Below are positions 34,901 through 37,900 of a stretch of 64,000 nt of DNA, piece after piece. The position numbers and the translations under genes were made by a program. Source of the stretch: Dimorphilus gyrociliatus (lineage: Eukaryota; Animalia; Annelida); contig CAJFCJ010000003.1 in assembly GCA_904063045.1 (NCBI GenBank), positions 1,798,001 to 1,862,000 of the forward strand, given 5' to 3'. Each line of letters begins with the position of its first letter. Position 1 is the first letter of the stretch. The notes under the pieces were generated by a model. That model was not told where the DNA came from, did not search any database, and was given only the letters and a program-made list of their open reading frames with translations.

Positions 34901-37900
34901 CTTTTGTTCTTTTCCGCGTTGAGCGAACAAATGGTTCATTTTCCTCATTTTTATCCTGATTAATAAAAGTGATAAAATTTTCATGTAATAAGGTATGGAA
35001 ATAATTCTTACAACATCGTTCAGTATGGGCTTCTTTTTACTCTCTTGTATATAGATTTCCAGTTCCTTTTCTCCAAATATCCGACGCTTTTTCTCACATT
35101 CAATGAGGTCATAACGAGGCCGGGGAATAAAACCATAGGAACATTTCGCTAACGGTTGAATGATACCAGCATAGTCATGATCAACATGTGGTTGAGGAGT
35201 TCGTTGAGCTTCTGATGATGTGCTATTTGCACCTTGTGCTTCTGGAAGAACATCACCTGTGGCTGCCATTCTTTCATCTTGTTCTCTTTGCAGTCTTTCA
35301 ATCATAACATCCAGATTGGAATGTTGACTTTCATCATCTTCTTGCCCAACATCGCCTCCAGTATCGGCTAGTGAGACGTCCAATACTTCTCTATCGCCGG
35401 ACGGAGTAAGAGCAATTTGAGGCACTAAATGACCCAACTCGGCTTTTTCTCGGCCAGGAACAAATCTTTGTAAAGAAGGAGGATATGGCATACCGTTCAT
35501 ATCTACGAGGAAAGGAGGAGGCATTTGGTGAGGAGGCATTTGAGTTTGTTCATCCAAGACAAAGCCAGCTGAATCGCGAATGAGAGGTCTATAGTCAGTA
35601 TGAAAAAACAGGTCATTTGGTAGTTTTTCAAAAACTTCATTTTTATAGAATCCGAAGTGAGATAAAAAGCCGTGAGCATCTGTACAAACAAACGAAGAGC
35701 CGTCCTTTGACCATTTACCATCCAAAACTGCTCCATGTCCTTGTCCTTCAATGGAGTTTAAAAACTCAAAAACTTTAGTGCCTGTTTCCAAGTCCCATAT
35801 GATAATATATCCATCGTGACCAGCACTCAACATAAGGTAAGGGTCAGTTGGATGCGTCTCAAGCACATAAACCTCAGTAGTATGTGATACAAATGTCGAA
35901 ACAAGTTGACCAGTTGATGCACGCCAGAGTTTAACGGAAAAATCACTGACAGCCGTTAAAACGTGAATGTCATCACATGTCCAAGCAACCATTGTTACTT
36001 TCAAAGGCTTTTTATCTCTGAAAATGTTATGGTTGATAATAACGTTTCACCTTGATAAAAAATGAAGCTGGTACACAAATATTTAGTATTTTCAAGAAAA
36101 TAACGCAAAGACTTACAGATTAACATCAATATTACTATCATTTTTACTACCACTTCTATGACCGTTAACTCTTATTACAACAGCTTTCCATTGTTGTCTT
36201 TCATATCTCCACACGCGAGCAGTGCCATCCCAAGATCCGCTAACAAATTTATCCGTACCCTTTGCGTACTGGATACTATCTACATATTCCTATATTAAAT
36301 TTTTAAATTAGTCTTTTCGCGTTTCTTTTAACTGAGTTAAATTAATTCTAGCTTCGGATGATGATGAAGATGAGCAACAAACAATCACAAACGAACATCA
36401 AGTTTAATTGTACACAGTATGCACTTACTACAAATATGTATAGAAAATTCAAATCTCGATATAACCAGAACGTTTTTTCTGCTTTTGGAAAATATCTTAG
36501 TTAATAATGGAGGCATCGATGATATATTTTAACAGGCCTGGCTAAAATCGAGATCTGAATTATACATTTTTAGTTCAGACAAACTTACTCTCTTTTTAAG
36601 TCGTTCATTCTTAATACAAGCGTTTTCCACGTATCATTGGTGAACCGCCATATACGAGCTGTACCATCTCCACTCCCACTCAAGTATTCATTTAAATTGT
36701 GAGCAAATTGAATACTATCAACTGGAGCCTGAAGTATATTACACTCAAACATTCATTCACACATAAAGTGATTGGACAAAATATGATTTTGATGATGTAC
36801 AAATACAAAGTTTGATACTTACCGTATGAGCCTCCAACTCGGCAATTTTATTTGGTGCAGAAGTGAAACAGTAAACTCTAACTGTATTATCAGTGCTGCC
36901 TGTGACTAGAAAAACGCCACCGGGACTGAAAGATGAACATAACATTTGAACTCCAGCTCTAGACCGTTCGATAAACTTTATAGGTTTAGGCCTGTAAACA
37001 TTTCAAGTAAAATAATAGTATTTATATGAAACGTAGACTAACGTGAATACTCGGGTCTCCTGATTATAATGCCAAAAGCAAACATTGCCTTCTTCCCCAG
37101 TGCTCATAAAATAGCGATCGTTACATCCCGCTCTGACCAACGGACAGAATTGTAGCGAAGTTATAGGAGCTGTATGGCCATTTAAAACCGTTAAATGTTC
37201 AAAATTCAGAGTACTCCAGACACGTATTGTTCTATCACAACTCCCTATTGAAATATAATCGACTATTTACTAATTTCTTTATTACGAGTCATTCTTACCA
37301 GTAGCCAATATAGTATTATCATAACTAATAGCCATATCCGTTATTTCTTTAGCATGACCTCTTAATGTTCTAATCAAACGGCCATTGTGAGCATTCCAAA
37401 CTTTTACCAAGTGATCATCAGCTCCCTGAAAAGAGTTTAATAAAGTTATGTTTCTTGAAGCTATTGAAGAGCACCGTAATGATGAACTGGCCGTTATTGT
37501 CATAAATTACACAATAAACAGCAGATAGATGACCCAGAGTTCTTTTCTGGCGTCGAATATTGGAATACAGGGTTACAGGTAATGAATGCTTTCCTAGTAT
37601 ACGACCTGTATATTCTCTACCATGAATCAAATAGTCTGAAAAGAGGTTTTTCGTTGGATCATGTTTTGAATCTTTAAATAATTTATTTCTTACAAGCATT
37701 TATATTTTTCCTTGTACTCTGAGATAAGGGTAAAGCTCGCCCTCGGCTTTTAACCGATAGTTCAGGAAAACAGGATGAAGAAAAATCTATTGGATTATTT
37801 AAAATATTTTTTCAAAATCAGAATTGTACCAACAAAAATCACGCACCCTCTTTTGTTCGTAATAAGGATTGTCTTCCAGCACCCAATAGAGTTTTGACTC

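What the first reader, a model, noticed from the sequence alone, without database searches (positions are those of the whole stretch)
36018..36822. BRWD/PHIP has a second duplicated mutually exclusive exon pair that swaps a WD40 blade
Seen (minus strand): after ..ELEAHT| come exon A (36728-36589, [41 protein letters not shown]..) and exon B (36289-36117, [41 protein letters not shown]..). They are obvious paralogs, both phase 0 in and phase 2 out (140 and 173 nt) with GTAAGT donors. Each joins exon 36017 in frame; together they frameshift. Neither appears in the ORF track. Known: BRWD/PHIP proteins are WD40 substrate receptors of DDB1-CUL4 and chromatin readers. Inference: there are two propeller variants with different partner specificity. 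With TPP2 this makes two such cassettes within 10 kb, suggesting exon duplication supplies isoform diversity in a compacted genome.
Basis: partly seen in the sequence, partly recalled or inferred. Interest (0 to 1): 0.85.

Follow-up and report, generated by a model that had tools for sequence, protein, structure and literature searches.

The report
Either/or blade exons in BRWD gene
A small marine worm's BRWD/PHIP chromatin-regulator gene carries two old copies of one exon and puts one or the other into its message, giving two proteins that differ in one whole blade of their propeller domain; this kind of switch is well known but had not been reported for this gene.

Summary
On the minus strand, exon A (36728-36589, 140 nt) and exon B (36289-36117, 173 nt) are paralogs, 50% identical over 42 residues. 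Both have intact AG acceptors and GTAAGT donors. Either alone keeps the BRWD/PHIP frame; both together, or neither, give early stops.

cDNA contigs from four public runs show A joined to the downstream exon and B joined to both neighbours. Two runs from a diverged lineage hold both forms. One same-strain run shows only A and another mainly B. No A-B junction was seen. The upstream-to-A junction was not seen directly.

A related species' genomic contig keeps both exons, in the same order and sizes. Both are under purifying selection, and B is also strongly constrained at synonymous sites. Five other spiralians, including two annelids, have a single copy of 140 nt (143 in one). So the duplication is old but specific to this worm's lineage.

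An AlphaFold model of an ortholog shows the exon encodes all four strands of blade 5 of an eight-bladed propeller. A and B differ at two predicted top-face contact positions.

This is a new member of a known kind; coronin-1D has a comparable blade swap. The scan has noted many similar exon pairs in this genome. Different partner specificity remains inference.

The parts
36823..36990 (-). Upstream constitutive exon (ends ..ELEAHT; supplies the His of the blade-5 WD repeat)
   Evidence: Spliced at both ends in cDNA contigs of X6, X2 and X4. It has 0 amino-acid changes against L004.
36729..36822 (-). Intron between the upstream exon and exon A (94 nt)
   Evidence: GTAAGT..CAG. No contig coverage in any run. 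56% identity to L004.
36741..36762 (-). Conserved intronic 22-mer (GTGTGAATGAATGTTTGAGTGT), 13-34 nt upstream of the exon A acceptor; candidate splicing control element
   Evidence: 20/22 identical in L004, while the rest of the intron is essentially unalignable and synonymous sites are saturated.
36589..36728 (-). Exon A, 140 nt, phase 0 in / phase 2 out; blade-5 variant with Pro and Gly at predicted top-face positions and a short loop
   Evidence: The junction 36589>36017 is seen in X1, X2 and X4. Conserved in L004 at 41/46 aa, with dN 0.085 and dS saturated. 140 nt is the ancestral exon length.
36290..36588 (-). Intron between A and B (299 nt); the only intron of the laid stretch with cDNA contig coverage
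   Evidence: Contigs run through it at depth 31 (X6), 11 (X2) and 2.8 (X4), while the five neighbouring introns spliced out in those runs have none. 46% identity to L004.
36428..36575 (-). Long hairpin inside the A-B intron, specific to this strain or species
   Evidence: -34.6 kcal/mol with z -4.4 on the transcribed strand, and z -2.5 on the other strand. Unique in the window. Not conserved in L004, whose intron folds at z +1.2. Not alignable at 90% in X2. No Rfam match.
36362..36374 (-). Conserved intronic 13-mer CTCATCTTCATCA in the A-B intron
   Evidence: 12/13 identical in L004.
36290..36310 (-). Conserved A/T-rich 3' splice region of exon B (TAATTTAAAAATTTAATATAG), with a likely branch point CTAAT just upstream
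   Evidence: 19/21 identical in L004. The AG-exclusion zone is only 21 nt, so the branch point is proximal.
36117..36289 (-). Exon B, 173 nt, phase 0 in / phase 2 out; blade-5 variant with Tyr and Trp at predicted top-face positions and a longer loop
   Evidence: Junction 36117>36017 is seen in X6, X2 and X4, and 36823>36289 in X6, with a loose end in X2 and X4. 155/173 nt and 50/56 aa identical in L004, with dS 0.39 against saturated neighbours. One difference in 174 nt in X2/X4 against 9.8% in constitutive exons.
36018..36116 (-). Intron between B and the downstream exon (99 nt); its first 13 nt (36116-36104) are conserved
   Evidence: GTAAGT..CAG. No contig coverage. 12/13 identical at the donor end in L004.
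35011..36017 (-). Downstream constitutive exon (starts ..[12 protein letters not shown], blade 6 onward)
   Evidence: Joined to A or to B in cDNA contigs; its 3' end is set by the junction 35011>34954. WD40 hits.

Best explanation
Exons A and B are a tandem-duplicated, mutually exclusive exon pair in the single BRWD/PHIP-type gene of this worm. An ancestral 140-nt, phase 0/2 exon encoding all four strands of blade 5 of the eight-bladed WD40 propeller was duplicated in this worm's lineage. That happened after the split from the other annelids examined. Each mature message carries one copy, so the gene makes two full-length proteins that differ only in blade 5 and the start of the following loop. 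Productive messages are kept exclusive at least by reading frame. Both exons are 3n+2, so including both or neither creates an early stop, and such messages are expected to be removed by nonsense-mediated decay (inferred, not tested). The choice is regulated or at least variable: one run shows essentially only A, another mainly B, and two show both. Short conserved intron blocks beside each exon, and strong synonymous constraint inside B, are the likely cis-control elements (inferred). B keeps the more ancestral sequence, while A evolved about three times faster. The two differ at two predicted top-face contact positions of the blade (Pro/Gly in A, Tyr/Trp in B, Lys/Arg/Gln in other animals). 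This most likely changes what the propeller's top face binds (inferred).
For: Anatomy and frame are shown.

RNA evidence:
- Junction 36589>36017 (A to downstream) is in X1 (a true RNA library, 60-nt side), X2 and X4.
- Junction 36117>36017 (B to downstream) is in X6, X2 and X4.
- Junction 36823>36289 (upstream to B) is in X6, and appears as a diverged loose end in X2 and X4.
- No 36589>36289 junction appears in any run.
- In X1 the downstream-exon contig runs unbroken into A, and in X6 it runs unbroken into B.

Selection:
- All listed differences between the window and the X2/X4 lineage are synonymous inside A (5 of 5) and inside B (1 of 1).
- Against L004, A has dN 0.085 with saturated dS, and B has dN 0.060 with dS 0.39.
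- B has 1 difference in 174 nt against a 9.8% rate in constitutive exons (P 3e-7).

Conservation of the pair: L004 holds both exons with the same order, sizes and splice signals, and the same diagnostic residues.

Lineage specificity: the exon is single-copy in Owenia, Paralvinella, Lingula, Pecten and Tubulanus, 140 nt in four and 143 nt in Tubulanus, with the same phases. A and B are sisters on the tree (support 73/73), with branch lengths 0.95 and 0.32.

Structure: the AlphaFold2 model of the Owenia ortholog has pLDDT 88 and 32 strands, hence 8 blades. The exon equivalent covers strands a-d of blade 5.

Hotspot rule: the R1-2, R1 and D-1 positions are taken from PMC4383882, and the residues were read.

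Against: - The upstream-to-A junction (36823>36728) was never seen directly. The only hint is that A contigs stop exactly at 36729 in X2, X4 and X6.
- All read evidence comes from assembled contigs, which drop rare forms. Absence of the A-B junction therefore does not prove exclusivity, and the depths are poor measures of isoform ratios.
- In X6, exon A is seen only in a contig that continues through the A-B intron.
- Nonsense-mediated decay of the double and skipped forms was not tested.
- No protein-level or binding data exist.
- The hotspot assignment rests on a sequence rule, not on a model of this protein.
- The tree support for A+B as sisters is weak, because only 42 columns were available.
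Confidence: 0.85

Rival explanations
1. Only one isoform matters. B is the working exon, and A is a weakly used or mostly unproductive copy whose transcripts largely keep the A-B intron and are degraded, so the pair acts as a dosage valve rather than as a protein switch.
For: In X6 the B form has depth about 1000, while A appears only in an intron-retaining contig at depth 31. The upstream-to-A junction was not seen. A evolves about three times faster than B. B is closer to orthologs.
Against: The A-to-downstream junction is in frame and present in three runs. It is the only form in X1 and the deeper form in X4. A is under clear purifying selection at the protein level: 5 of 5 listed differences are synonymous, and dN is 0.085 with saturated dS against L004. 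A keeps the exact ancestral 140-nt length and intact splice sites in two further lineages.
Confidence: 0.1
2. The two isoforms are biochemically equivalent. The duplication only split the regulation of one function between two exons, without different partner specificity.
For: The structural core of the blade is the same in both copies: VDSIQ, SGS-DGTAR-W and the W-K strand. No binding data exist.
Against: The copies differ at two of the three predicted top-face hotspot positions (P against Y, and G against W) and in loop length. Each copy keeps its own residues in L004 although synonymous sites are saturated. That pattern is hard to explain without copy-specific selection.
Confidence: 0.2
3. 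Exclusivity is enforced during splicing. The A donor and the B acceptor cannot be joined, so transcripts that select both exons are stuck with the A-B intron. Reading frame and decay alone do not do the job.
For: The A-B intron is the only intron with contig coverage in X6, X2 and X4, while the five neighbouring introns spliced out in those runs have none, and no A-B junction contig exists.
Against: None of the known blocking mechanisms fits. The intron is 299 nt with a proximal branch point (AG-exclusion zone 21 nt). Both donors are GTAAGT U2-type. The hairpin is not conserved. No complementarity is conserved between the species. A spliced A+B message would be an NMD target and could simply be too rare for contigs.
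Confidence: 0.15

Closest known systems
Coronin-1D exon 5a/5b of tetrapods (PMC3203266)
   Same: [quoted passage not shown] One copy is closer to the single exon of outgroups.
   Different: It is a different gene family (an actin-binding coronin with a seven-bladed propeller) and a different animal group. Here the host is a BRWD/PHIP chromatin reader with an eight-bladed propeller, and the duplication is confined to one small annelid lineage.
Tandem exon duplication-derived substitutions / classical MXE pairs (PMC8373072, PMC4165533, PMC6071210)
   Same: Homologous neighbouring exons of like size and phase, one per message, conserved and selected, with frame incompatibility when both are included.
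   Different: BRWD1, BRWD3 and PHIP are not mentioned in the main text of the human catalogue consulted, and no paper linking BRWD to such a pair was found.
OGDH exons 4a/4b and alpha-tropomyosin exons 2/3 (steric hindrance through distant branch points, PMC7969005)
   Same: A two-exon mutually exclusive pair with an intervening intron that is not removed.
   Different: Here the intervening intron is 299 nt and the AG-exclusion zone before B is only 21 nt, so the branch point lies far from the A donor.
Docking-site/selector RNA pairing (Dscam, 14-3-3 zeta, MRP1 type; PMC6071210) and the TPP2 pair in the same window (scan note s1-080680)
   Same: Invertebrate tandem-duplicated exons with short conserved intron sequences nearby.
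   Different: No complementarity conserved between this species and L004 was found among the conserved blocks or introns.

Membership tests
Tandem-duplicated mutually exclusive exon pair | Neighbouring exons are homologous to each other | tested here: met
   50% aa identity over 42 residues. tblastn E 2e-13 and blastp E 7e-15.
Tandem-duplicated mutually exclusive exon pair | Same entry and exit phase, with intact splice signals on both | tested here: met
   Both are phase 0 in and phase 2 out, with AG acceptors and GTAAGT donors. The same holds in L004.
Tandem-duplicated mutually exclusive exon pair | Each exon alone keeps the reading frame | tested here: met
   Translations.
Tandem-duplicated mutually exclusive exon pair | Messages carry one or the other, not both | tested here: met
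   A-to-downstream and B-to-downstream junctions are in cDNA contigs of four runs, and no A-B junction is seen. Caveats: these are contigs, not raw reads, and the upstream-to-A junction was not seen directly.
Tandem-duplicated mutually exclusive exon pair | Both copies are kept by selection | tested here: met
   Only synonymous differences are listed against X2/X4. dN is far below dS against L004 for both copies.
BRWD/PHIP family | N-terminal WD40 propeller, BRWD ancillary domain and two bromodomains; orthology to BRWD3/PHIP | tested here: met
   Pfam WD40, PF25313 and two PF00439 hits. Best hits are named BRWD3/PHIP-like. The BRWD1_N domain of the N-terminus was not checked in the window.
BRWD/PHIP family | Acts as a DDB1-CUL4 substrate receptor | not testable with these tools
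   This rests on general knowledge of the family. No DDB1-binding motif was mapped here.
MXE enforced by frame and nonsense-mediated decay | Double inclusion and double skipping create premature stops | tested here: met
   140+173 = 313 nt, which shifts the frame. Stops are shown. Decay itself was not tested.
MXE enforced by steric hindrance | The branch point of the second exon lies within about 50 nt of the first exon's donor | tested here: not met
   The intron is 299 nt (233 nt in L004). The AG-exclusion zone is 21 nt and a CTAAT lies just upstream of the B acceptor. The threshold is taken from PMC7969005.
MXE enforced by U2/U12 incompatibility | One of the introns carries U12-type splice signals | tested here: not met
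   All three donors are GTAAGT and all acceptors are AG.
MXE controlled by docking-site/selector RNA pairing | Conserved intronic sequences that can pair in competing ways | tested here: inconclusive
   Only short stems at chance level were found, none at homologous places in the window and L004. The exon A x B-downstream intron duplex has z -3.1 in the window only. Only two species could be compared.

The most novel reading that the evidence does not exclude
The A-B intron may be refractory to splicing for a reason that matches none of the known mechanisms: not steric hindrance, not U2/U12 incompatibility, not docking-selector pairing. Transcripts that select both exons would then be trapped as intron-retaining RNA. 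If so, this locus would point to a further way of enforcing either/or exon choice. It would also toggle the top-face contact residues of a CRL4-type chromatin reader between a 'blank' blade (Pro/Gly) and an aromatic blade (Tyr/Trp).
Probability: 0.12. Interest if true: 0.6.

Novelty: new member of a known kind. Interest (0 to 1): 0.38.

Why it matters
BRWD/PHIP proteins link chromatin marks to CUL4-DDB1 ubiquitin ligases, and mutations in their human counterparts cause neurodevelopmental disease. What their propeller binds is poorly known, and no solved structure of this propeller turned up in the PDB sequence search. This worm offers a natural experiment. Two versions of one blade have been kept apart by selection, and they differ at predicted contact positions while the scaffold is unchanged. 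That points to blade 5 as a functional surface worth testing in any BRWD protein. The locus also comes with three diverged lineages for comparison and a few short conserved intron blocks. That makes it a compact model for how a two-exon switch is controlled in a small-intron genome. It does not change any general concept, because blade-swapping mutually exclusive exons are already known from coronin-1D.

Tried and rejected
- Steric hindrance was rejected: the intron is 299 nt and the branch point is proximal.
- U12-type incompatibility was rejected: all donors are GTAAGT.
- Docking-site/selector pairing found no support. The inverted-repeat scan gave only 10-19 nt AT-rich arms. Duplex scans against shuffles were unremarkable except exon A x B-downstream intron (z -3.1), which is not conserved.
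- The A-B intron hairpin is real in the window (z -4.4). It is absent from the related species, so it was rejected as a conserved control element. It has no Rfam match and is not a repeat within the window.
- A third exon copy, or other duplicated exons in the gene, were not found.
- An ancient origin of the pair was rejected: five spiralian loci have one copy each.
- The PDB sequence search gave no BRWD propeller structure, only generic WD40 proteins.
- P0002 and P0003 had no genomic record.
- The ORF at 41307-42305 was checked as a possible syntenic prenyltransferase and turned out to be an ankyrin-repeat protein.
- A spliced protein of this window could not be folded, because it has no reference. 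The Owenia ortholog was folded instead.
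Full report
**1. The observation**

- The upstream exon ends at 36823 with ..GAG GCT CAT ACG|gtaagt.
- Exon A runs 36728-36589 (140 nt), preceded by cttcag and followed by gtaagt.
- Exon B runs 36289-36117 (173 nt), preceded by atatag and followed by gtaagt.
- The next exon begins at 36017 after ttttcag.
- The translations match the peptides quoted.

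Joining upstream + A + downstream, or upstream + B + downstream, gives an open frame. With both exons a stop appears three codons into B, and with neither a stop follows after one codon. A and B are 50% identical over their first 42 residues. They find each other by tblastn at E 2e-13. They are the only significantly paralogous open-frame pair on this strand between 30 and 46 kb (E 7e-15), and the window holds no third copy.

The gene is of BRWD/PHIP type. The two large downstream exons carry WD40, the BRWD ancillary domain PF25313 and two bromodomains. The best database relatives are named BRWD3 or PH-interacting protein.

**2. RNA evidence**

The stretch 35300-37300 is held by six public runs. 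I laid four of them on 34900-37900. All are assembled contigs, so they show presence, not absence, and their depths are rough.
- **X1** is a coral metatranscriptome with near-identical sequence. One 635-nt contig joins the downstream exon (35443-36017) to 60 nt of exon A (36589-36648). There is no coverage of B.
- **X6** matches the window with no differences and is spliced at every intron, so it is cDNA-derived. A 7.4-kb contig (depth about 1000) runs from the downstream exon into B (junction 36117>36017). A second contig joins the upstream exon to B (36823>36289).
- **X2 and X4** are two studies under different organism labels. They share one set of differences from the window, about 10% in constitutive exons. 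Both junctions are present in each: B to downstream at depths 72 and 4.2, and A to downstream at depths 33.8 and 8.9. A loose end at 36290 reads as the diverged end of the upstream exon.

No run shows an A-to-B junction (36589>36289). So both exons are spliced into messages, both forms coexist in one sample, and their balance differs sharply between samples (A only in X1, mainly B in X6).

Two reservations apply. The upstream-to-A junction was not listed in any run; the only hint is that the A contigs of X2, X4 and X6 all stop exactly at 36729, the base shared by the acceptor and the upstream exon's last G. Also, in X6 exon A occurs only in a 469-nt contig (36261-36729, depth 31) that runs on through the A-B intron into B.

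Re-reading the depth table gives one more point. In X6, X2 and X4 the A-B intron is the only intron of the stretch with any contig coverage (31, 11 and 2.8). The five neighbouring introns spliced out in those runs have none. This is recorded as unexplained (see section 5).

**3. Conservation and age**

A search with the 375-aa downstream exon found a Logan protein 87% identical (P0268). Its 71-kb genomic contig (L004) carries the same gene followed by TPPII, as in the window.

L004 holds both exons in the same order and sizes, with AG acceptors and GTAAGT donors.

| Region (window against L004) | L004 coordinates | nt identity | aa identity | dN | dS |
|---|---|---|---|---|---|
| Exon A | 5331-5470 (140 nt) | 109/140 | 41/46 | 0.085 | saturated |
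| Exon B | 5704-5876 (173 nt) | 155/173 | 50/56 | 0.060 | 0.39 |
| Upstream exon | ends at 5249 | 139/168 | 56/56 | 0 | 2.3 |
| Downstream exon | starts at 5976 | 763/993 | not computed | 0.083 | saturated |
| Introns | | 46-56% | | | |

Both copies are therefore under purifying selection as protein. B is in addition several-fold constrained at synonymous sites.

The X2/X4 lineage tells the same story. All listed differences inside A (5 of 5) and inside B (1 of 1) are synonymous. B has 1 difference in 174 nt and A has 6 in 141. The five constitutive exons have 73 in 748 (P 3e-7 for B and 0.013 for A).

Genomic loci of two other annelids (Owenia, Paralvinella), a brachiopod (Lingula), a nemertean (Tubulanus) and a scallop (Pecten) each contain a single copy of this exon. 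It starts at the same position in phase 0 and is 140 nt long, 143 in Tubulanus. All database orthologs inspected also carry one copy in the protein.

So the ancestral spiralian exon was 140 nt and phase 0/2. A kept that length, and B gained 33 nt at its 3' end. On a 42-column tree A and B are sisters inside the spiralian group (support 73/73, weak). Their branch lengths are 0.95 for A and 0.32 for B, against a median of 0.11. B is 43-64% identical to orthologs and A 38-57%.

The duplication is old (synonymous sites are saturated between two species that both have it). It is nevertheless confined to this worm's lineage.

**4. What the exon encodes**

No BRWD propeller structure was found in the PDB by sequence. 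I folded the Owenia ortholog (residues 150-660) with a 36-sequence alignment. The model has pLDDT 88 and pTM 0.85, with 32 strands, hence eight blades.

The exon equivalent (model residues 220-265) covers strands 222-227, 233-238, 242-249 and 252-259. These are strands a to d of blade 5. It also covers the start of the poorly ordered loop leading to blade 6. 'Swaps a WD40 blade' is therefore accurate.

According to WDSPdb (PMC4383882), the top-face contact positions of a blade are R1-2, R1 and D-1, the 16th, 18th and 34th residues. D-1 is the residue just before the Asp of the Asp-His-Ser-Trp network. Counting back from that Asp gives the following.

| Position | Exon A | Exon B | Other animals |
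|---|---|---|---|
| R1-2 | Pro | Tyr | Lys/Arg/Gln |
| R1 | Asp | Asp | Asp |
| D-1 | Gly | Trp | mostly Lys/Arg |

The scaffold residues (VDSIQ, SGS-DGTAR-W) are shared by both copies. Each copy keeps its own residues in L004. By the paper's list, Pro and Gly are not 'binding-type' residues, whereas Tyr and Trp are. A also has a loop 11 residues shorter than B.

That the two isoforms present different top faces is an inference from this rule. It was not measured.

**5. How exclusivity and choice may work**

What the sequence shows directly is frame incompatibility: both exons are 3n+2. Decay of the double or skipped forms is assumed from general knowledge of nonsense-mediated decay.
- **Steric hindrance** does not fit. 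The intron is 299 nt (233 in L004), and the AG-exclusion zones are 13, 21 and 31 nt, which place branch points near the acceptors. The threshold of about 50 nt is from PMC7969005.
- **U12-type signals** are absent.
- **Competing RNA pairing** found no support. Inverted repeats are short and AT-rich. Intron-intron duplex energies match shuffles. No stem recurs at homologous places in L004. An exon A x B-downstream intron duplex stands out only in the window (z -3.1) and remains a lead.
It is not conserved: the L004 intron folds no better than shuffles (z +1.2) and the sequence does not align. It has no Rfam match.

What is conserved between the two species, against a background of unalignable introns, are four short blocks.
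- A 22-mer just upstream of the A acceptor (36762-36741, 20/22 identical).
- A 13-mer in the A-B intron (36374-36362, 12/13 identical).
- The unusual A/T-rich 3' splice region of B (36310-36290, 19/21 identical).
- The first 13 nt after the B donor (36116-36104, 12/13 identical).

Together with the synonymous constraint in B, these are the best candidates for binding sites of splicing regulators.

The selective retention of the A-B intron has two possible readings. It may be the nuclear precursor of an unstable A+B message. Or the A-B intron may be hard to splice. The data cannot tell these apart.

**6. Comparison with what is known**

Tandem exon duplication giving mutually exclusive exons is a well-described class (PMC8373072, PMC4165533, PMC6071210). 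A close precedent exists for the structural outcome. [quoted passage not shown]

I found no report of such a pair in BRWD1, BRWD3 or PHIP. I also found none dealing with mutually exclusive splicing in this worm: four papers held both search terms and three were listed, with titles on unrelated subjects; I did not open them.

Other notes of this scan list many candidate pairs in the same genome, including TPP2 8 kb away. One of those notes names the species as Dimorphilus gyrociliatus, which I did not verify. These notes are context only. They do not show that a compact genome relies on this device more than others do.

**7. Verdict**

The finding is real and well supported by RNA and by comparative evidence. 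It is a new member of a known kind: a lineage-specific, selected, regulated either/or exon pair that exchanges blade 5 of the BRWD/PHIP propeller. The functional claim of different partners is plausible and now has a specific, testable basis, namely two top-face positions and a loop. It is still inference.

Noticed in passing
window 36428-36575 (minus strand): The long hairpin in the A-B intron (scan note s1-083251) is real: -34.6 kcal/mol, z -4.4 on the transcribed strand and z -2.5 on the other. It is not conserved in the related species L004 (intron fold z +1.2), is not a repeat within the window, and matches no Rfam family.
   Followed up: yes
window 36290-36588; runs X6, X2, X4: The A-B intron is the only intron of the 3-kb laid stretch with cDNA contig coverage (depths 31, 11 and 2.8). 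The five neighbouring introns spliced out in those runs have none. It could be a precursor of an unstable A+B message or a poorly spliceable intron.
   Followed up: partly
window 36117-36289 against L004:5704-5876 and runs X2/X4: Exon B is unusually conserved at the nucleotide level: dS 0.39 where neighbouring exons are saturated, and 1 difference in 174 nt where constitutive exons differ at 9.8%. This suggests regulatory information inside the exon.
   Followed up: partly
The worm seems to be a frequent cohabitant or contaminant of such samples, and a cryptic sister lineage exists.
   Followed up: no
L004:12093-13005 and window about 27700-29800: The BRWD gene is followed by the TPPII gene both in the window and in the related species' contig (conserved neighbourhood). 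In Owenia (L002) and in GCA_022750525.1 (L001) a prenyltransferase gene (PF01255) lies head-to-head upstream of BRWD. In the window the ORF at 41307-42305 (+) is an ankyrin-repeat protein instead.
   Followed up: partly
L001 (GCA_022750525.1), 2646-7448: In this unidentified animal, whose protein P0001 was the best hit of the representative search, almost the whole BRWD protein (residues 206-1806) is encoded by one uninterrupted exon, so the blade-5 exon boundaries are lost there.
   Followed up: no
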